Positions 25,012 through 34,287 of a DNA stretch of 64,000 bases are shown in pieces (the stretch's first letter is position 1; every line of letters starts with the position of its first letter). The notes beneath the pieces are model-generated. The model saw only the letters and a list, made by a program, of their open reading frames with translations. It was not told where the DNA came from and ran no database searches. The stretch lies in the NCBI GenBank assembly GCA_964199315.1, contig OZ116699.1, positions 38,936,001 through 39,000,000 on the forward strand, written 5' to 3'. The stretch is from Orbicella franksi (taxonomy: Eukaryota). Made by a program: the position numbers and the translations under genes.

Positions 25012-28000
25012 TCACGTGCTAGCACTGTTAGTGACGTATTCGGGTAAGAGGTAAGGATATGGCAAAAATCCCTCGTCCACTCGTTTTTCATTTTCTTTCA
25101 TCATCTGTTCGGTTACTGTCTTCAGCTCGTCGTGAAACCTTTCTATTAATTCTTTTGCTTTCTTGCCCTCGATTTTAGATGAGTAATCGAGTAACTGATC
25201 CAGATGAATTCCTGCCAGGTTAGAACTAAGTTCCGCTATTTCCTGTTGATGAAAATAAGATGGTAGAAAAAGATTTCTAACGGTTAATTTCTGCACAAAA
25301 TCACATAAATAAAGGAAGACAAACACTATTGGAAAAGCTTTCTAGTTAGAACCTCTAACCTTGTGGGAAAGTTACATAAAGTGAATGAAAGTGAAAGAAA
25401 CAGACGAACAAGATATCTGGGAGACAAATATTAAGGCAAGGTCTAGACTAAACTGCTATATCTCCAAAAAAACATATTTGCCTTTTTTATAGCCCCGAGG
25501 CATCTAAATGATATCGAAGAACGCCCGGTGCATTAAATACAGAGAAAAAAATAATAGCTTCCGTCGTGATTGTCTCAGTATTGACTACGGAGAGGGAAGG
25601 AGGGGGGTCATTGACTACTGGACGATCATTGTTCGCTAACAAGTAATGAAATTCAGTTTACGTTTGAAGTTGTCCTTCAGTAGCATTTCGGAATAGCTAA
25701 ATATATTGGTTCAATTGAGGCCTTGAGCTACTGTCATTCGCGTCACCTACACCACTGTTATATCACGCACTATGGAATATTTTCTTTCACTCCCTGATAA
25801 GGCCGTAGAACGGCGAAAGTTTGGAACTAAAATACAGTACCTCAAGGCCTCAATTGAATCAATATATTGAAATTCAGTTTCTTTTGTTATTTAGACAAAT
25901 TGTTCATCAGAACTTTACAAAGTGATTATTTTCTCGGAACAATAACGCGTCGCTCAAGTTCTGATGGAATCTAAAGACTTTTAATAACTGTCGCTAACCC
26001 ATGCAATAAACAGCACATACATACACTTTTCTTCATTTAAATCTTTCAAAAAAATTAAATTACCGCCTTACCAGTGCTACAGCCTTGTTTCCGAACATCA
26101 AATTAGAGAAGGTGGCAGTGCCATTACTGTCAGCAAACAGCCTGTGTGGTGCATTAGGTACAAAGCCTCCATATTCCAAGATAGGGTAAGTAGTGGCAGC
26201 GTGCTGACCAGTGAACGCCCACAGTAGAGTGGTCAGCACCTTGCTTAAAGAGGCTTTCGTTTCTATGGTGGCTGGGAATTTCTTCACCTACAATGAAGCG
26301 ACCGTGTGATCGTTATTTAATATCAATTTAATTTAAATATGATATCAAACGCTGCCCATATTTCTCAGTTTCTTGAGTGTCTGGCTCGAAACCTGTAAGA
26401 AGTTTTTTGATGCAGGGGTCCCGAAACAGATTTCAAAGGATGCGGCGCAAGCATACATAATTATGTCCCACTTTGCTCCTTCAATGATAAGACTTTATTT
26501 ATAATAAATACAATGATAGCTGCTACTTTCTATGCTCGTTCTTACCATGCCCAGTCCCCCAAAGTCTCCCTGTTTACCATCAGCTGACAGTTCATTAACT
26601 AACTCTTGCAACTCGTTATCGGCTACGACCTCTTCGTCATCTTCATAATACCTGCAAAATTCACATAACAGCGATCGTATCTATGAGTACCTTACATTAT
26701 ATGAATGCCACAGTCAATCAATTTATTACACTTCTTCGGGCTAGAATATCATTGCAACAACCCGGAAAGATTTTGCAAAAAATGTTGTATTAGAAACTCT
26801 GTCTGGTATACTCTCCAAGGATCTAGAATATCTGCAAGTTATCAAATAATTGAAAATATGATAACAAGAAATATTAAAATTAACGTAGTTTGACGTTTCG
26901 ATGCGTCAAGCATCATTACTAAGAACAAAAAATTGTATATTGGCATATACAATTTTTCATTCTTGATAATGATGCTTAATGCGTCGAAACGTCAAACTAC
27001 GTTTATTTTAAGATTTTGTCTTAAATGCTTTTAGCAAGCAACTGACCATCCGTTAATATTATATAGAATAGTTAATTATGTAGATATTTAAACAGAACGT
27101 ATCAAGATTGGCCAACTTGGCGAGAAACGTAAGCACAGCCAGATGATATTAACAACAAGTGATACTATTCAAGTGAGTGACTACTGTCTTTGTAGTAACA
27201 CCATTTGGCTCCTTTACCAAGCACGTTGTAAATATCTCATGTAAATGAAGTTAATAATTGTTGGGTGACATACGCATCAATGAAAGCGTCAGCAAACTCG
27301 TTGAGTTTGTGATACAAGAGCTTTCCGTCATCTCGGTAAGGATAGTATGGAAGTTTCTCTGTGTCATCAACTCCTCGTTTCTGTTTGAAGGTAAAATTCA
27401 TACCAGTTAGCAGGAAGCAATAGGCAATATTTCAATTCCCCCCCCCCCCCCCCCACGCCCCCGGGTGAGATGCTAGTCCATAGAAGGGTTAAAACCCAAC
27501 GTAAAATTTTTCGGTACCGCATTTATACCCCTGGGCGGAGGGCGGCCCCGTGAGAGTAAAATGTCTTGTTGAAGAGCAGAACGCAATGACCCCGACCAGG
27601 GCTCGAACCCGAACCGCTCGATCCGGAGTTCAACGCGCTTACCGTTACGCCACAGCGCCTCCATTCTTAGGACAGTACCGGCCTAAATTTTGATAAGTAA
27701 AAACTTTGACAGTTACTAAAGAAGTCAAGTTTTCATATTAATTATATCGCATTATCTTGCTTACACTGCATTCACAATTGCAATGCATAATATGTGCAAC
27801 AACTGGCGTATTGAGAATTAATGAATGAGTTTAAAGTCTAGCGTAAAGGTATAACTCTTGCAATTATATGAATTGTGTTTGTCAATCAAACGGAATTTAA
27901 CCAACCTTTAAGTCTTCCAATAAATCTAGATCTTGGAATGACATTCGCTGGTATTCTTTATTCACAAGTTCAAGAGCGCTAGAATAGTCAATGCTAAGAA

Positions 28001-31000
28001 CCTTGTAAATTGGAGCACTTCTACCTGTTAGAGAAAAATAAATTCGAATCAAATCATTCCTTATCGAGAAGAGATATTACAAAGAGAGGAACAAAGAATG
28101 AAACATTAAAGACATCCTTATTAGTATCGCTCAAAGTTTGGCCATATCCGATTTTGTACATTCTCCCACACCTTCCTCCTATCTTCCTGTTGTGAAGGGC
28201 AAAACAATAATGAGTCACTGCCTCATCTTTGTATTAAATATCACGAAGAAATTTTACAGTCCAAATAGAATAATGTAGAGTGCAAGTGGAAGTTAAACAA
28301 AGTGCTATCAAGGGAAATCTAACTATTCTCTTTCAAATTACTCATTCTCACTTCGTTTTCAAGGCCCCAAATTATTTAATTCTCTTAGCACTGAAATCCA
28401 AAATGCCTCTAGCATTGCTGTTCTCTTAAGTCATCTTTCTTGGTATAGCATAAGTATTTTTTAGCTCTCTTAGTGTGCTTTTTTCGTGCTTTCTTTGCTT
28501 TTGCGCATTCAAGCGTTCAGCTTTGCTTAACTACTTCTTATCCTAAATTATGATTATTTTTTGTGCCGATGACAGAATTTGTATTCTTTCTAAGTCTTAG
28601 GCATCTTTAAGGCAGTCCTTTACATAAGCCTTATTGGCTTCCCTAGGCTTCCTTGCCTTTTTAATTGATGTTATGTAAATATACTTTTAAAGGACAAAAA
28701 AATAAAGCAAACAAAGCAAAAAAATTGCCTGTAAACAAAGCAAAACACCATTACCGAACAACTTGATCTCAAATAACTTGTTTGTTTCCAGAGCTGCTCG
28801 GCAGTGCTGCCGAATGACCTGATAAATTGGATGATACTCCGAGAAGTATTTCTCTACCAAAGTGCAGGGCGCATCCAAGTATAGATGAACTTTGAGTCGC
28901 TTTCTTATTAGGTGTAGAGAATTGAAATCTGCTCTTTGTACGAATGACTTGGCTAGGAACCAGTCCTTCCCGTCTATTGGAGTGTGGACTTTGGAGTCTG
29001 GTGTGGAGTCCATTTGAATAGCGACGGGATTTAGGCGTTTTATTCCAAGCTCTGCTTCGACGACAGCAAAGAAAGCTATCGGCGAAGTCATTTGTAAAAC
29101 AGTGTGGTTGAATTTGACGTCACGTAGTAAAGCCTCTGGCATCTTAACACCGTCAAGTTCAGGATAAATGTTGACATAAATATCGCCATTGTCGATAGCC
29201 TATGAGACAATCAATCAAGCAAGCACGTAAACCATCAGTAATTATATCAGTATATTGATAAATGGATCAATCATTCTCAAAGTATAACTATCATTGGCAA
29301 CTAATCAATCTTACTTTATTGTTTATTCAGTAGACATAATAAAATTGTAGTTGTCCGACGGGCGGTACGTTTCGATGTTGTTGACGTCATTGTCGAAGAA
29401 TTAGCAAACAAAGAACAACTTATGGTTAGATTGATGTAATACTTTTCAGTTGTGCTTAATTCAGCAAAGCAAGCAAACTTAAGACTAAGAAATCACAGCG
29501 CAAGATGACTGAGTTCTGGTTGTGTTCAGTGCATGACTCTCGAGAACGAGGTCGATACATTTGTATCTCATGTACGAGTAATGAAATGTCAATCACTCAC
29601 AGTTCAATTAAACCCCAACAATTAACTGTACAATGTACGACTAGGTTGATATTGATTTGCCTAAGAAATTAGCAAATAAACGGACAAACCTAGAAAGAAG
29701 CAAATAAATAGACAATTGAATCCGATTGTGCTAAATATGATCAGTTTGTATGGTCAAGAAGCCAGGACGGGTGAAAGTGGTGTTTTGTCGAAACAGAACA
29801 GTAACAAGGAACGTAGTTACCAGTAAGGATGACAAGTAGGTTTATTTACCTTACATTATAGAAGTTTAGTTGTTACAAGTGACCGAGCTAGCGCTGTTCA
29901 GCGCTGCCATCAATCACTTGCCTTTTTGTCATTTGTTACTTACAAAACATGGTTAAAACTGTTACCTGCTCAAGAGTTATTCCCTCTTTCTTGGCAAAAG
30001 CCGTTTTAAAAACCTCATCCCAGTCAAAGTGTTTATTCAGTTTGTTTTCAAGAAGAGACTTCCATTCAATACCATTACTCCCTGATGATGAAATCGGTAA
30101 TGGTAGGAACTTTGATAGACCATACAATACACCATTCAAACAGCTTTGGATCTATTCAAGCGGTTTAAATAACTTATACAAGCCAACATATATCTAATCA
30201 AAGTCGCAAAAACATACTCGCATTGACTCAAAGACAGTCCCAGCGGCCAGAAGTCCTCTGACCCCCCCCCCCCCTCCCCTGGCTAGAAGATTGGCCCCTC
30301 TCGCATGCACGTGGCATGGACCACTCCAGCAGGGTGCCATGTCAATGCAGAAGCCTCAAACAAGGTCAAACGACTGAGTAAAATACCCAGAAACACAGTC
30401 AATAGCACACTTATTTAACACTGAAAACACAAAGTCTAGCTGGTTGGGGGTGTTAGTACAAGACACCCTCCCCTCCCCCCTGCTTTTGACAGCTGGCCGC
30501 CAGCAAGTTACCAACAGATAGGCCAGTCATTGGGCCATGTGCCCAGCCTGGCCTTGACGGAGCCCCCCCTGGGTTTAAAGTCGCTGGCTTAGCCTGGATT
30601 CGGGCGAAAACCTAGCGGGCATGTTTTTGCGAATTCGCTCAGATATATTCAGAAGTATTCCACGGTATTTTTTGTCCGTTAATTCGTGGCCATGATGGCC
30701 CCTGATAAATTTTGTCAAAATGCCCGTCGTATGTCCCTGTTTATAGCTGTTACTAAAAGTGTCCTCTGTTGGTTTTTGGTTTCAGTATAGTCGGCTAGAA
30801 ATGGAAACGCCATCATTTCTACTAAAATAGGTACTTATATTCTAGTTTTGACAGTGTCCTTTTTCCATTGTCGGACTCTTAAAATTTTTTCACCATGTTG
30901 ATTTACCTTCTTTATTTGTTACACGCCACAGTTGATATGGATTAACGCCTGCAACCCGCTGATCTGCAAAACAGCGGTCTTTGAAAAAGTTCTCTTCGAT

Positions 31001-34000
31001 GGCTGGCACAAGTCTTAAAGCACTCATGGCACTCCTTTTCTATAACGAAATGTAAAATGAATCATGTTAAAGGTACTGAACGTAAGACTGAACGTAAGAC
31101 TACCTGCATAATACCTCACGCCTCCGCCACATTTTTTAGCGCATTTGGTAAAATACTGCGTTAGTATGGGGCTGTACACGAATTTGTCAGAATTGTCAAA
31201 TGGAACATCACAGTCGATATGAGAGGATGCTTAATAACGATGACAGCTCTGGTTTCAGAGAGGCTTAGAAAAAAGCTATTAAAAATCGGTATATTGTTTG
31301 TAGGACGTTCTTTCCAAAAAAAGACGGCCCCTTGTTATCTTAAATGTTGTTACAATCCTACTGAAAATTCCATCGTTATAGACACTGCAACATCAAATGT
31401 TGAAGATAATGAATTTGTAAATTACCTTAGCAACGTCTGCGAATAATTACTGATTAAATAATGATTAAAAGAAATCGAGTGTATACTGAATTATTATATT
31501 GCTTTAGTTAATGATACCCTGTGTTCTTTGTAGAAAGTCTCAAATACCACGGCAAAATCAATCAATGTTGGCGTTTCATGAAAGCGAGGATCTTTTAGGG
31601 TGAAGTGTGACTCCAGATCTTTGTTAACATCAGCGTTATCTGTCATTTTCATGTACCACTCTATAGTGAAAGGATCTGTGGAAGCACTCTGGACAAAACT
31701 TGCTGCTCCTTTTTTCGACAACGTTGGTACCATCAAGTCTTCTGATCTACTTAAAGAAATCAAAATGAAACATATCCTTTCACGATTGCATGCAGCCCGT
31801 CTAGCTACCTTGGAAAAGTTTTTTAAAAGGCCAGAGAAAATAGCTTTCACCACAACTGAACATTTCATACGTTGTTTTAACATGATGTTTCCACTTGTCA
31901 GCTGACGCATCAAAGTTAGCAGCTTGTTTAGAAACCAATTGCAATGTAATTACTTTACAGTATGAGTAGTTGAAATTTTCACGCTTGTTTAAATAAATAT
32001 CAAGAATCATTCTTTCAGTGGCATGATAAAGACTAGCTTATTTATGTTGGAGCAATTGTGTCAGTGTAATGACTTACTTTGAGTAGCGATTGTCTTTAAA
32101 AGAAGACAAGCGGATAAGTGTTTTCTTTATCTGTCTGCTGAGTTCTCGTTTCACAAGACACTGAGGAGACGAGAAGCGAGGAAGGCTTATCCGACACTTA
32201 AGTTCTGCAAAAATGAAAGGTGAAACAATTCACGGTTTTTGAACCGGAGTGTCAATATTCCTTTTTATTTCGCCTCCAGAAGATGATAAGATATAAATTA
32301 ATACACGATATCATGAAAGAGTTTAATTTAATTAACTACAAGCAGCCCCGGCATTATGAGGTCACTTTAGAAATAATTTTCGAACTTCTCCAAAACAAAA
32401 ATTAAGAACACTAACCCACATGTAGATTACAATGAGTTGGTTCATTGGTTGTTCCCCATTGGTCTCGAGTGTAGGGCAATCATTGAGCAGGACTGAGTAA
32501 ACTCGTTGGGAACGCGAAGGGAATTATGGGAAAGAAGAAGAATAGAGGGAGGCAGAGACTCTTTATTCCTCCACCCCATCACCTATCGTACTCGCACCAG
32601 TACTTCCCTTCCCTACTTCAAAAGACAACTAGGGTCAACACTGTTACATTGTAGCGACCGTAGCATAGACCATAGGTACTTAACATTGAATCTTTGGGGG
32701 TACGAAAGCTGACCAAAAGAGTGTTGAATAATCTTTCAGACAAAAATCCGAAAACGTTTACCATTACTTGTATTAAAGAAAACAAATTGTTTCGGTTCGC
32801 TAAAGGCTTTAAAAGGCCCCCATACGGACCTCTGAGAGATACTAATATTGGAAGATGTCTTGATGACTCCAAATCTAGAGATGATAAGAGTCTTGAACAC
32901 TTTTCATACCCTCCTGCCCAGGTACATTTGGCACACGTTACTTTATCTACCATGCATGGACTGACTTAGAAATACTATGACTGCTACCAGGAACATACAT
33001 ACCATTACATGTTATTCCACCGAAATCATCGGCGCATTGGCATTGATATCCATCAATAAGATTATAGTTTTGTACACAGATTCCCCCATTTTGGCACGGG
33101 TTTGGCTCGCATTTATTTTCTTCTACATTCTTTATCATTGGAACAGTAGACTCGGACGATTCTTTAACGCCGCTACCAGGCACATCTCCACTAACGCCGT
33201 CATATTCTGAGAAAAGCCAAAGGAAAAAAAAGTTTGTGAGGTATCCGTATGCAACATCTTGGTTCATTTTCTTTTAGAGATTGTTCAGAAACATACCTAG
33301 AAGAAGAATATCTTTAGGACCTACTTATGGCTTGCATTCGGCTTGGAGTGATTACAGCTAGTAATTACAGTGTCATAATTAATAGGCCGAATTATTTTGT
33401 TGCATCGATTGATTTGTGACTGCACGGTCCTTACTATGTATGTACGTATGCGTGTATGTATGTGTGTATGAATCTAGTAATTAAAATGGTTATTGTATCC
33501 TTAGATGATTAGATACTTAGCAATCAGGTTCTAGCCTGACTAGTGTGTCAGTACCTATGTACATGTTACTCAGGTATCTCTTTAGCCTTGTCGCCAAGAG
33601 AAAAACTGGAATTGAAATGTAGCTACAAACCCCGTCACCAGTATTGCGTGTCATTCCATTATGATGTAACCAGCTCTCTTATTTTCTACTTAAGATAGTT
33701 TTAATTAAGTGTAGCCTGGTGAAACAGGGCTTTCGGAGGTAAGAGTGACATTTGTCTCGAAGTCTTTCCCAGCCCAAAGCTTTCCGGCTTCTTGGCGCTT
33801 CCTTGCAAGAGAACCACTGCATTGCTATTGCCGGATGTATTTACTATAGCTTGTATTAACGCTAGCTAACAACTTGATCAAGTTTTAAAACGTCCGTTTT
33901 TACCTTTGGAAATATCAGAAATATAAGTTGATATCCTAAGTCGATCAACAGCAGCTGCAGATTTTAAATGCTGTAGATTTTATGAATGTGTTGTATTGTA

Positions 34001-34287
34001 TGTAACTCCGAAGAATTCTGTCATACTTGTCACAAGATACATACTACTTAAAAATCAAGCAAGTTGATCAAACAGTAGTTGCTAGAACGCCGATAATTTC
34101 TGCTCTTCAAATGTTACCCTCAAAACAGTCTGAAAATTGGGAAAAAAACGCTTATAAAGAGCTTTTAAAAGACTTTTAAGTACAATAAGTCTCTAGTCAA
34201 AACGATGCTTTAAAATAAAAACTTACCTGCTTTACTGCTATGACAGAGAACAATTAGAGCCACAAGAACTACGGGTGCCTTCATCAT
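25012..34287 (-). CDS. Gene C: secreted EGF-lipoxygenase fusion (698 aa), probable pseudoenzyme
   Basis: Exons 34287-34227 (signal MMKAPVVLVALIVLCHSSKA), 33206-33003 (EGF), 32204-32078, 31749-31518, 31039-30907, 30081-29966, 29199-28755, 28024-27906, 27380-27274, 26651-26546, 26287-26072, 25242-25012. Total 2097 nt, all GT-AG, no internal stop. LOX motifs: FFKDRCFADQRVAGVNP, WFLAKSFVQRAD, HPIYQVIRQH, KRGVDDTEKLPYYPYRDDG, DNELQ, QHAA, VPNAP, YPYLLPEYVTNSAST. Confidence 0.9.
25700..25868. repeat. Inverted-repeat element in gene C intron
   Basis: aatatattggttcaattgaggccttgag ... ctcaaggcctcaattgaatcaatatatt. Confidence 0.6.
26882..27003. repeat. ~120-bp near-perfect hairpin, possibly Penelope-derived
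   Basis: acgtagtttgacgtttcgatgcgtcaagcatcatta ... taatgatgcttaatgcgtcgaaacgtcaaactacgt. The Penelope origin is inference from the gacgtttcg/cgaaacgtc core. Confidence 0.6.
27405..27662 (-). mobile_element. Diverged SINE (family 1 related) in gene C intron
   Basis: Segments similar to 48261-48551 (gatgctagtccat, gtgagagtaaa, cagggctcgaacccg, ccgctcgatccgga). Confidence 0.7.
30190..30646. mobile_element. ~460-bp MITE, copy 1
   Basis: Ends atatctaatcaaagtcgcaaaaacat ... gcgggcatgtttttgcgaattcgctcagatat. Body is the reverse complement of 42346-42816. Confidence 0.8.
33003..33110 (-). other. EGF-like domain of gene C
   Basis: CEPNPCQNGGICVQNYNLIDGYQCQCADDFGGITC, six cysteines in canonical spacing, in a phase 1-1 exon. 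Confidence 0.93.

What the first reader, a model, noticed from the sequence alone, without database searches (positions are those of the whole stretch)
25012..28930. Intact frame but rewired active site: candidate lipoxygenase pseudoenzyme
Aligned to human ALOX5 from memory. SDFHVHQTITHLLRTHL corresponds to ADFNSLHLIRKRLKVHL, so iron ligand His367 is Lys (AAG, 28902-28900) while His372 is kept (28887-28885), and second-sphere Gln363 is His. QHAAVN corresponds to QHAATT, so His550 is kept and Asn554 is Thr. The C-terminus is NSAST rather than Ile. The Ala/Gly stereo-determinant (Ala410) aligns to Phe (TNKLFEIKL). C-terminal Thr and non-Asn residues are tolerated in some LOXs, but loss of the first His plus a bulky Phe is not expected in an active enzyme. 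With all 11 introns and the frame intact, the inference is a retained non-catalytic lipid-binding or structural protein, or altered metal chemistry.
Basis: partly seen in the sequence, partly recalled or inferred. Interest (0 to 1): 0.8.

Follow-up and report, generated by a model that had tools for sequence, protein, structure and literature searches.

The report
Secreted coral lipoxygenase-like protein without iron site
A stony-coral gene encodes a secreted protein with a lipoxygenase fold in which two of the five iron-binding positions are replaced, and all corals, sea anemones and soft corals examined keep these changes under strong selection, so it is probably a repurposed, non-oxygenating relative of an enzyme rather than a broken gene.

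Summary
A 12-exon, 11-intron minus-strand gene (34287-25012) encodes a 697-aa protein: signal peptide, one EGF domain, a helical region with no PLAT domain, and a lipoxygenase core. HMMER alignments to solved lipoxygenases place Lys390 (28902-28900) on the first iron-ligand His and Thr582 on the ligand Asn. Phe433 falls on the Gly/Ala stereo-control site. The second His (395), third His (578) and a C-terminal Thr are kept.

It is not a private mutation or an error. Every orthologue read (eight scleractinian genera, four sea anemones, four octocorals) has Lys and Thr at these sites, while 67 of 67 canonical relatives have His at the first. The clade is monophyletic and follows the species tree. 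dN/dS is 0.08-0.09, and the helix carrying Lys390 shows 0 nonsynonymous against 16 synonymous changes. Spliced transcript contigs carry the Lys codon.

The best reading is a conserved, secreted lipoxygenase-fold protein that has lost iron-dependent dioxygenation and gained another role, either ligand binding or new chemistry. Activity is untested.

A 2018 survey noted the same three substitutions in one Acropora transcript, without interpretation. I found no description of the clade-wide conservation, the EGF architecture or the selection. Another first-reader note in this scan (s1-228922) covers the same gene.

The parts
34227..34287 (-). Exon 1: start codon and signal peptide (hydrophobic N-terminus, about 20 aa)
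   Evidence: Read from the sequence. It matches the N-terminus of transcript-derived P0156 and its orthologues. AF2 gives helix 8-21 followed by a disordered linker. No signal-peptide predictor was available.
33003..33206 (-). Exon 2: acidic/Ser-Gly linker and one EGF-like domain with six Cys
   Evidence: Pfam PF00008, E = 1.3e-6, above the curated cut-off. PDB EGF domains match residues 53-92.
32078..32204 (-). Exon 3: conserved Cys loop (C-x-I-S-L...C) and the start of the helical N-terminal region
   Evidence: The Cys pair is shared with canonical secreted cnidarian LOX paralogues. The frame is confirmed by P0156.
31518..31746 (-). Exon 4: clade-specific, most conserved helical segment (STDPFTIEWYMKM...). 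It has a tandem AAG/TAG acceptor at 31749/31746.
   Evidence: This is the most conserved 30-aa window among the 16 clade members. Transcripts use the downstream acceptor.
30907..31039 (-). Exon 5: start of the lipoxygenase core (F..QR.AG.NP motif)
   Evidence: Alignment A1/A2. The joint 30080/30906 is seen in the RNA contig.
29966..30081 (-). Exon 6
   Evidence: Joints 29198/29965 and 30080/30906 in the RNA contig of run X1.
28755..29199 (-). Exon 7: WFLAK motif and the former iron-ligand helix, with His386, Lys390, Arg391, His395, Phe409 and Phe433
   Evidence: HMMER alignments to 5med and 3fg1. Pfam Lipoxygenase match. Residues 370-410 show 0 nonsynonymous against 16 synonymous differences from Oculina.
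28900..28902 (-). Codon AAG = Lys390, at the position of the first iron-ligand His
   Evidence: It is Lys in all clade members and His in 67 of 67 canonical relatives. It is unchanged in the X1 RNA contig and the X15 contigs.
28885..28887 (-). Codon CAT = His395, the second iron-ligand His, retained
   Evidence: It is Asn in three of four octocoral orthologues.
28771..28773 (-). Codon TTT = Phe433, at the Gly/Ala (Coffa) stereo-control position
   Evidence: It aligns to the Coffa Gly of coral 8R-LOX. It is Phe, Tyr or His throughout the clade, and Gly or Ala in canonical relatives.
27906..28024 (-). Exon 8
   Evidence: Joints 28021/28752 and 27380/27906 in the RNA contig.
27274..27380 (-). Exon 9: PYYPYRDDG motif
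26546..26651 (-). Exon 10
26072..26287 (-). Exon 11: second ligand cluster Q-H578-A-A-T-T582, with the third His kept and the ligand Asn replaced by Thr
   Evidence: Pfam Lipoxygenase match and alignment to 8R-LOX. Thr is invariant in the clade although its codon varies (ACT/ACC/ACG/ACA).
25012..25242 (-). Exon 12: C-terminal helix, LPYPY motif, C-terminus ...NSAST, and the stop codon
   Evidence: All 16 clade members end at the same alignment column with NSxxT.

Best explanation
The gene encodes a secreted protein made of a signal peptide, one EGF domain, a helical region and a lipoxygenase fold, with no PLAT domain. It belongs to an Anthozoa-wide orthologue group that split from canonical secreted cnidarian lipoxygenases before hexacorals and octocorals diverged. 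On the stem of this group the iron centre was dismantled. The first ligand His became Lys, the ligand Asn became Thr, the conserved Leu next to the first His became Arg, and the small Gly/Ala that lets O2 reach the substrate became Phe. These steps are shown by sequence comparison.

The following steps are inferred. The protein no longer performs iron-dependent hydrogen abstraction and dioxygenation of polyunsaturated fatty acids. The Lys ammonium group may take the place and charge of the lost metal, pairing with the C-terminal carboxylate, which is still positioned exactly as in active enzymes. That would keep the core packed. The remodelled pocket, now lined by Lys, Arg, His and Phe, would then be the functional site of a new role. 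The most plausible role is binding an extracellular lipid, oxylipin or anionic ligand. Less plausible is metal-independent chemistry.

My odds are about 0.75 that it is not a dioxygenase and about 0.55 that it binds no catalytic metal at all.
For: Ligand substitutions are verified against solved lipoxygenase sequences.

Lys390 and Thr582 are invariant in 16 full-length clade members from Scleractinia, Actiniaria and Octocorallia, and in all further cluster members covering the site. By contrast, 67 of 67 canonical relatives have His at the first site and 87% have Asn at the other.

Three of four octocoral members also replace the second His by Asn. That is hard to reconcile with a conserved metal site.

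Of 79 positions that are at least 75% conserved in canonical LOX, 64 are kept. The 15 changed positions include Arg391 next to the lost ligand, ligand position 582, and nearby Phe409.

Selection is strongly purifying. dN/dS is 0.094 for window versus Oculina (dS 0.60) and 0.081 for Montipora versus Acropora. The ligand helix (residues 370-410) has 0 nonsynonymous against 16 and 12 synonymous differences in these two pairs.

The clade is monophyletic (SH-aLRT 100) on a long stem (0.85), with short internal branches that follow the species tree.

The gene is expressed and correctly spliced. The AF2 model is confident (pLDDT 88.7) and has a lipoxygenase fold.

All 16 members end at the same column. 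Canonical paralogues with intact ligands coexist in Acropora, Nematostella, Stylophora and Montipora.
Against: No activity, metal-content or ligand data exist.

Two His and the C-terminal carboxylate remain in hexacorals, and they could still hold a metal.

From memory, mutants of the first His in human 5-LOX retained some iron although they were inactive.

Thr occurs at the Asn position in 2 of 67 otherwise canonical relatives.

I had no model coordinates, so the proposed Lys-carboxylate contact is not checked.

The very strong constraint on the site would also fit a still-catalytic centre.

Two polyA RNA runs labelled as the same species showed no reads on the exons, so expression is not universal.
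Confidence: 0.6

Rival explanations
1. The protein is still a metalloenzyme with altered coordination. His395, His578 and the C-terminal carboxylate hold Fe, Mn or another metal. Lys390 (free or carbamylated), or water, fills the vacated position. The enzyme would then have different chemistry, for example transforming hydroperoxides made by the canonical secreted paralogues.
For: Three of five ligand positions are kept in all hexacoral members. The C-terminus is positionally invariant. The ligand helix is under extreme constraint. His386 appears one helical turn before Lys390 in hexacorals.
Against: Three of four octocoral orthologues also lose the second His, and have Gln rather than His at 386, so no replacement ligand is conserved across the clade. 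Arg391 puts a second positive charge beside the site, and Phe433 fills the O2-access position. I know of no lipoxygenase with a Lys ligand, and found none in the papers searched. His386 and His395 are nine residues apart on one helix, which I judge too far to share one metal.
Confidence: 0.28
2. The locus is a decaying or recently disabled copy. On this reading the Lys is a private mutation, an assembly or sequencing error, or the start of pseudogenisation.
For: There is none beyond the atypical residues themselves. Two polyA RNA runs gave no reads on the exons.
Against: The frame is intact with 11 canonical introns. The same 12-exon structure is present in Oculina. Full-length spliced transcripts occur in many runs. 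The Lys is conserved across Anthozoa. dN/dS is below 0.1.
Confidence: 0.02
3. The apparent loss is an alignment artefact. A register shift in the helix would bring another His (His386 in hexacorals, His389 in octocorals) into the first ligand position, so the site would be canonical in three dimensions.
For: A His lies within four residues of Lys390 in every member, at 386 in hexacorals and 389 in octocorals. Lipoxygenase ligand helices contain a pi-helical bulge, which could in principle shift register (from memory).
Against: The stretch from the WxxAK tryptophan to the ligand pair is ungapped in all alignments. The +20/+25 spacing from that Trp holds in 154 canonical sequences and places Lys at +20 in this clade. 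The candidate His differs in position between hexacorals and octocorals. This reading would leave the Asn-to-Thr, Leu-to-Arg and Gly/Ala-to-Phe changes unexplained.
Confidence: 0.1

Closest known systems
Acropora millepora transcript c006594, in Lohelaid & Samel 2018, 'Eicosanoid Diversity of Stony Corals' (PMC5793058, section 2.1.1)
   Same: The paper reports the same three substitutions: first conserved His replaced by Lys, ligand Asn replaced by Thr, and Phe at the Coffa position. It also describes the sequence as an outlier in its tree. It is very probably the Acropora orthologue of this gene, since Acropora members P0190-P0195 show the same residues.
   Different: The paper treated it as a single exceptional partial sequence. 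It offered no interpretation, did not mention the signal peptide or EGF domain, and presented no evidence of conservation or selection.
Canonical secreted, PLAT-less cnidarian lipoxygenases (for example Acropora P0218, Nematostella P0232, P0012 and P0014, Stylophora P0233, scyphozoan Sanderia P0008)
   Same: They are the closest relatives by tree. They share an N-terminal hydrophobic leader, the Cys loop, a helical N-terminal region in place of PLAT, and a C-terminal Thr.
   Different: They keep His-x4-His, His-x3-Asn and a Gly/Ala Coffa residue, and they lack the EGF domain. They share only 30-37% identity with this gene and sit on much longer branches.
Cyanothece CspLOX2 'mini-lipoxygenase' (PDB 5med), with Pseudomonas aeruginosa LOX (4g32/5ir4) a weaker match
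   Same: CspLOX2 is the best structural match to the model (TM 0.81-0.83 normalised to 5med), and its sequence match reaches into the region N-terminal to the core. The Pseudomonas LOX matches less well (TM 0.67-0.72, rmsd about 10-12 Å). This gene has no PLAT domain by Pfam or in the model; that these bacterial enzymes carry helices in place of PLAT is from memory.
   Different: These are active iron enzymes with all ligands. Sequence identity is about 21-23%, and they have no EGF domain.
Plexaura homomalla 8R-lipoxygenase domain of the AOS-LOX fusion (PDB 2fnq, 3fg1, 4qwt)
   Same: It is the best sequence match among solved structures (E = 3e-42) and has the same core fold. According to PMC5793058 the separate P. 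homomalla 8R-LOX sequence also ends in Thr.
   Different: It has a PLAT/C2-like domain, the full ligand set (His, His, His, Asn, C-terminus) and Gly at the Coffa site. It is cytosolic and fused to a catalase-like AOS.
Epidermal lipoxygenase-3 (ALOXE3)
   Same: It is a lipoxygenase-family member that has largely given up dioxygenation for another reaction, hydroperoxide isomerisation (from memory).
   Different: eLOX3 keeps all iron ligands and uses the iron. Here two ligand positions are replaced.

Membership tests
Lipoxygenase family (Pfam PF00305) by sequence and fold | Significant match to the lipoxygenase profile and a lipoxygenase catalytic-domain fold | tested here: met
   PF00305 gives E = 7e-35 and 121 bits against a cut-off of 23.6. 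The AF2 model has pLDDT 88.7. Foldseek gives E about 5e-30 and TM 0.67-0.83 to 5med, 3fg1 and 4qwt.
Catalytically competent ('true') lipoxygenase | First iron-ligand cluster His-x4-His | tested here: not met
   The cluster reads Lys390-x4-His395, whereas 67 of 67 canonical relatives have His at the first position. PMC6612559 calls the two ligand clusters essential for true ALOX sequences.
Catalytically competent ('true') lipoxygenase | Second iron-ligand cluster His-x3-Asn/His/Ser | tested here: not met
   The cluster reads His578-x3-Thr582. Thr is invariant in the clade, while Asn occurs in 87% of canonical relatives and Thr in 2 of 67.
Catalytically competent ('true') lipoxygenase | C-terminal carboxylate ligand, with the chain ending at the conserved position | tested here: met
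   All 16 clade members end at the same alignment column with NSxxT. Canonical cnidarian relatives also end in Thr.
Catalytically competent ('true') lipoxygenase | Small residue (Gly or Ala) at the Coffa position, allowing O2 access | tested here: not met
   The window has Phe433 and the clade has Phe, Tyr or His.
Catalytically competent ('true') lipoxygenase | Bound Fe or Mn, and dioxygenation of polyunsaturated fatty acids | not testable with these tools
   This needs recombinant protein, a metal analysis and an activity assay.
Animal/plant-type lipoxygenase architecture | N-terminal PLAT/C2-like beta-barrel | tested here: not met
   There is no PLAT hit in Pfam. In the model, residues 105-240 are helical. 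PDB sequence matches do not cover any PLAT domain.
Pseudoenzyme (conserved non-catalytic homologue of an enzyme) | Clear homology to an enzyme family, with key catalytic residues replaced | tested here: met
Pseudoenzyme (conserved non-catalytic homologue of an enzyme) | Maintained by purifying selection and expressed | tested here: met
   dN/dS is 0.05-0.09 in stony corals and 0.21 in octocorals. Spliced transcripts are found in many runs.
Pseudoenzyme (conserved non-catalytic homologue of an enzyme) | Demonstrated absence of the ancestral activity | not testable with these tools
   This needs biochemical assays.
EGF-like domain | Six-cysteine EGF pattern and a profile match | tested here: met
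   PF00008 gives E = 1.3e-6 and 29 bits against a cut-off of 21.5. Six Cys are read in residues 53-87. PDB EGF domains match.

The most novel reading that the evidence does not exclude
This would be the founding, Anthozoa-wide example of a lipoxygenase-fold protein that has exchanged its iron centre for a Lys/Arg/His pocket. It would be either a secreted EGF-tagged receptor or carrier for extracellular oxylipins, or a metal-independent catalyst. In either case it would be a pseudoenzyme, or a new enzyme, retained since before hexacorals and octocorals split, in a family otherwise defined by its iron site.
Probability: 0.5. Interest if true: 0.75.

Novelty: new variant of a known kind. Interest (0 to 1): 0.62.

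Why it matters
Lipoxygenases are defined by their non-haem iron site, and searches of the paper library found no described lipoxygenase pseudoenzyme. This gene is currently annotated as 'allene oxide synthase-lipoxygenase protein-like', 'arachidonate 5-lipoxygenase-like' or 'lipoxygenase LoxA'. Coral oxylipin, stress and symbiosis studies that count it as an active lipoxygenase are therefore probably mis-assigning it.

If it is confirmed as metal-free, it would show how a buried metal site can be replaced while the fold is kept. It would also point to an extracellular lipid-sensing or matrix function shared by all anthozoans. The protein can be tested directly in Nematostella and Exaiptasia, which have orthologues and genetic tools.

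Tried and rejected
1. I tried two raw polyA RNA runs (X23, X24) labelled as the same species, to count alleles at the Lys codon. No reads lay on any exon; only low-complexity poly-C/G reads did. These runs therefore give no allele information. I relied instead on the X1 RNA contig, the X15 contigs and 16 near-identical transcript-derived proteins.

2. The exact-sequence look-up of the Oculina RefSeq isoform P0174 found nothing. The GenBank model P0177 gave the locus, and I rebuilt the CDS on it.

3. My first exon-3/4 junction was wrong by one acceptor, which broke the frame. I corrected it using the transcript-supported downstream acceptor of a tandem AAG/TAG pair.

4. Searches for a described lipoxygenase pseudoenzyme, for an EGF-lipoxygenase, and for the orthologues' accession numbers gave nothing relevant except the 2018 survey.

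5. I considered whether the skeletal-proteome 'lipoxygenase' mention concerned this protein. It refers to the PLAT domain of a polycystin-like protein, so I rejected it.

6. I could not measure distances around Lys390, because the structure tool returns no coordinates. The Lys-carboxylate idea therefore stays an inference.

7. Pairwise dS is saturated beyond the closest pairs, so I rely mainly on three pairs with dS of 0.6-0.85 for dN/dS.


Full report
**1. Gene model**

Open stretches on the minus strand between 25012 and 34287 join into 12 exons with 11 GT-AG introns and a clean 697-codon frame. The exons are 34287-34227, 33206-33003, 32204-32078, 31746-31518, 31039-30907, 30081-29966, 29199-28755, 28024-27906, 27380-27274, 26651-26546, 26287-26072 and 25242-25012.

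The translation differs at one residue (S122T) from P0156, a protein called on a 2.8-kb transcript contig. Fifteen further members of its 90% cluster are 89-99.6% identical to the model.

A 2685-nt RNA contig of run X1 is spliced at exactly these borders across the seven introns in the stretch I laid. It differs from the window at four exonic bases, three of them synonymous by my reading. Contigs of run X15 (library type not on record) have even depth through the introns and agree as well. The Oculina patagonica locus has the same 12-exon structure.

**2. The observation**

HMMER alignments of exon 7 and of the whole protein to solved lipoxygenases (Cyanothece LOX2 5med; coral 8R-LOX 3fg1/4qwt/2fnq) are ungapped through the ligand helix. 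They give these correspondences:

- Lys390 (AAG, 28902-28900) pairs with the first iron-ligand His.
- His395 (28887-28885) pairs with the second.
- His386 pairs with the second-sphere Gln.
- Phe433 pairs with the Coffa Gly.
- His578 pairs with the third His.
- Thr582 pairs with the ligand Asn.

The protein ends ...NSAST.

**3. Architecture**

Pfam finds one EGF domain (residues 56-88 of P0156) and a Lipoxygenase domain, and no PLAT domain. The N-terminus is a hydrophobic leader followed by an acidic, Ser/Gly-rich linker. No signal-peptide predictor was available.

An AlphaFold2 model built on an 83-sequence alignment is confident (mean pLDDT 88.7, pTM 0.86). It shows short EGF strands, then helices at 105-240 in place of a beta-barrel, then the helical core.

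By Foldseek the best matches are the Cyanothece mini-lipoxygenase (TM 0.81-0.83 normalised to the target) and coral 8R-LOX. This agrees with another first-reader note on the same stretch (s1-228922). The wording 'EGF replaces PLAT' is loose, however. The closest canonical relatives also lack PLAT and have no EGF, so the EGF domain is an addition to an already PLAT-less secreted lineage.

**4. Family and conservation**

A full HMMER scan with exon 7 and a search with the Exaiptasia orthologue recover one orthologue group. Its members come from:

- Scleractinia: Oculina, Desmophyllum, Pocillopora, Stylophora, Acropora (several species), Montipora and Porites.
- Actiniaria: Exaiptasia, Actinostola, Actinia and Nematostella.
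- Octocorallia: Dendronephthya, Paramuricea and two transcriptome sequences.

All of them have Lys at position 390, Thr at 582, a bulky residue (Phe, Tyr or His) at 433, and a chain ending NSxxT at the same alignment column. Hexacorals keep His395 and have His386. Three of four octocorals have Asn at 395, and all four have Gln at 386 and His at 389.

The nearest canonical relatives occur in the same genomes (Acropora, Nematostella, Stylophora, Montipora) and in a scyphozoan. They have a hydrophobic leader, the same N-terminal Cys loop, His-x4-His, His-x3-Asn and a Gly/Ala Coffa residue.

Among 67 canonical sequences in alignment A2, the first ligand is His in all 67. Of 79 positions at least 75% conserved in that set, the Lys clade keeps 64 and changes 15. 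The fixed or near-fixed changes are:

- His to Lys390
- Leu to Arg391
- Asn to Thr582
- Leu to Phe409
- Leu-Pro to Phe-Gly614-615

Glu to Asp399 and Arg to Lys407 are conservative and hold only in the twelve hexacoral members.

**5. Phylogeny and selection**

A maximum-likelihood tree of 50 sequences recovers the Lys clade as one branch (SH-aLRT 100). It is sister to the canonical secreted cnidarian group and sits on a long stem (0.85 changes per site). Its internal branches are short and reproduce the species tree: octocorals, then anemones, then complex and robust stony corals. This is the pattern of one ancient change of function followed by slow, vertical evolution.

Nei-Gojobori estimates on a codon alignment of eight orthologues:

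| Pair | dN/dS | dS |
|---|---|---|
| Window vs Oculina | 0.094 | 0.60 |
| Montipora vs Acropora | 0.081 | 0.85 |
| The two octocoral transcripts | 0.21 | 0.60 |

More distant pairs are saturated at synonymous sites.

By region, the signal peptide and linker evolve fastest (dN/dS 0.3-0.6). The helix carrying Lys390 and His395 (residues 370-410) is the slowest. It shows 0 nonsynonymous against 16 synonymous differences for window versus Oculina, and 0 against 12 for Montipora versus Acropora.

Codons at Lys390 (AAG/AAA) and Thr582 (ACT/ACC/ACG/ACA) vary synonymously, so the residues themselves are selected. Across all 16 members, 189 positions are invariant. The most conserved windows are a clade-specific N-terminal helix (STDPFTIEWYMKM) and the segments around the former ligands.

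**6. Interpretation**

The following are shown:

- The gene is intact, expressed and spliced.
- The substitutions are ancient, fixed and under strong purifying selection.
- Two of the five protein ligand positions, the neighbouring conserved Leu and the O2-access residue are all changed.
- No substitute His is conserved across the clade.
- Some members also lose a third ligand.

The following are inferred. Iron-dependent dioxygenation is lost. The first ligand is universal in active relatives, and the field treats the two ligand clusters as essential for true lipoxygenases (PMC6612559). From memory, first-His mutants of human 5-LOX are inactive.

The fixed chain end suggests that the C-terminal carboxylate still inserts into the core. 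A Lys ammonium group is a plausible stand-in for the metal cation. I could not check this without model coordinates.

The site is the most constrained part of the protein, so I think it is functional rather than merely structural. Being secreted and carrying an EGF domain, the protein most plausibly binds an extracellular lipid, oxylipin or anionic ligand, perhaps a product of the canonical secreted paralogues.

The main rival is an altered metal site that is still catalytic. Decay, sequencing error and misalignment are essentially excluded.

**7. Prior knowledge**

Lohelaid and Samel (2018, PMC5793058) listed one Acropora millepora transcript (c006594) with first His to Lys, Asn to Thr and Phe at the Coffa site, and described it as an outlier in their tree. 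They drew no conclusion from it. They did not describe the EGF domain or signal peptide, nor any conservation.

Searches for lipoxygenase pseudoenzymes, for inactive or lipoxygenase-like proteins, for an EGF-lipoxygenase and for the orthologues' accessions found nothing further. A 2026 Aiptasia oxylipin paper that mines anthozoan lipoxygenases does not mention it in the passages I read.

The substitutions themselves are thus already on record for one species. The clade, its age, its architecture and the selection on it are new as far as I can search.

**8. Verdict**

This is a new variant of a known kind, of moderate to high interest.

Noticed in passing
window 27587-27659 (minus strand), intron 8; surrounding repeat about 27440-27700: ARAGORN calls a tRNA-Arg(CCG)-like sequence inside the intron. 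Summed contig depth there is hundreds of times the flanking depth (about 90,000 against about 185 in X15). I read it as the head of a tRNA-derived SINE rather than a tRNA gene.
   Followed up: partly
window 26862-27023, intron 9: A near-perfect hairpin with two 79-nt arms, 85% complementary and 4 nt apart. It looks like a miniature inverted-repeat element.
   Followed up: partly
window 30200-30800, intron 5: A second high-copy repeat with a poly-G/C tract. Summed contig depth in X15 is roughly 30 to 80 times the flanks. PolyA RNA reads pile up only on its low-complexity tract.
   Followed up: no
window 31746-31749, acceptor of exon 4: There is a tandem AAG/TAG acceptor. The transcripts read (P0156, P0001) use the downstream site. 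The rebuilt Oculina isoform X1 CDS has a 232-nt exon 4 against 229 nt here. RefSeq isoforms of Oculina, Pocillopora and Stylophora differ by one residue in length, but I did not locate the difference. This may be conserved NAGNAG alternative splicing.
   Followed up: partly
window 28709, intron 7: Contigs of run X15 lack 24 nt here. It may be an allelic indel.
   Followed up: no
proteins P0094 and P0060 (hits; taxa unknown): Other lipoxygenase-like sequences in the public collection lack ligand His residues. P0094 has Asn and Gln at both positions of the first cluster, and P0060 has Gln at the first. Degenerate lipoxygenase-fold proteins may exist outside this clade.
   Followed up: no
Nematostella orthologue P0154 (805 aa): It carries a linker of about 100 extra residues, acidic and rich in Pro, Glu and Ala, between the signal peptide and the EGF domain. 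Linker length is highly variable, while the rest of the protein is conserved.
   Followed up: no
runs X23/X24 on window 25000-30990: Two deep polyA RNA-seq runs labelled as the same species, about 12% of each read, gave no reads on any exon of this gene. Either expression is restricted by tissue, stage or condition, or the label covers a divergent taxon.
   Followed up: no
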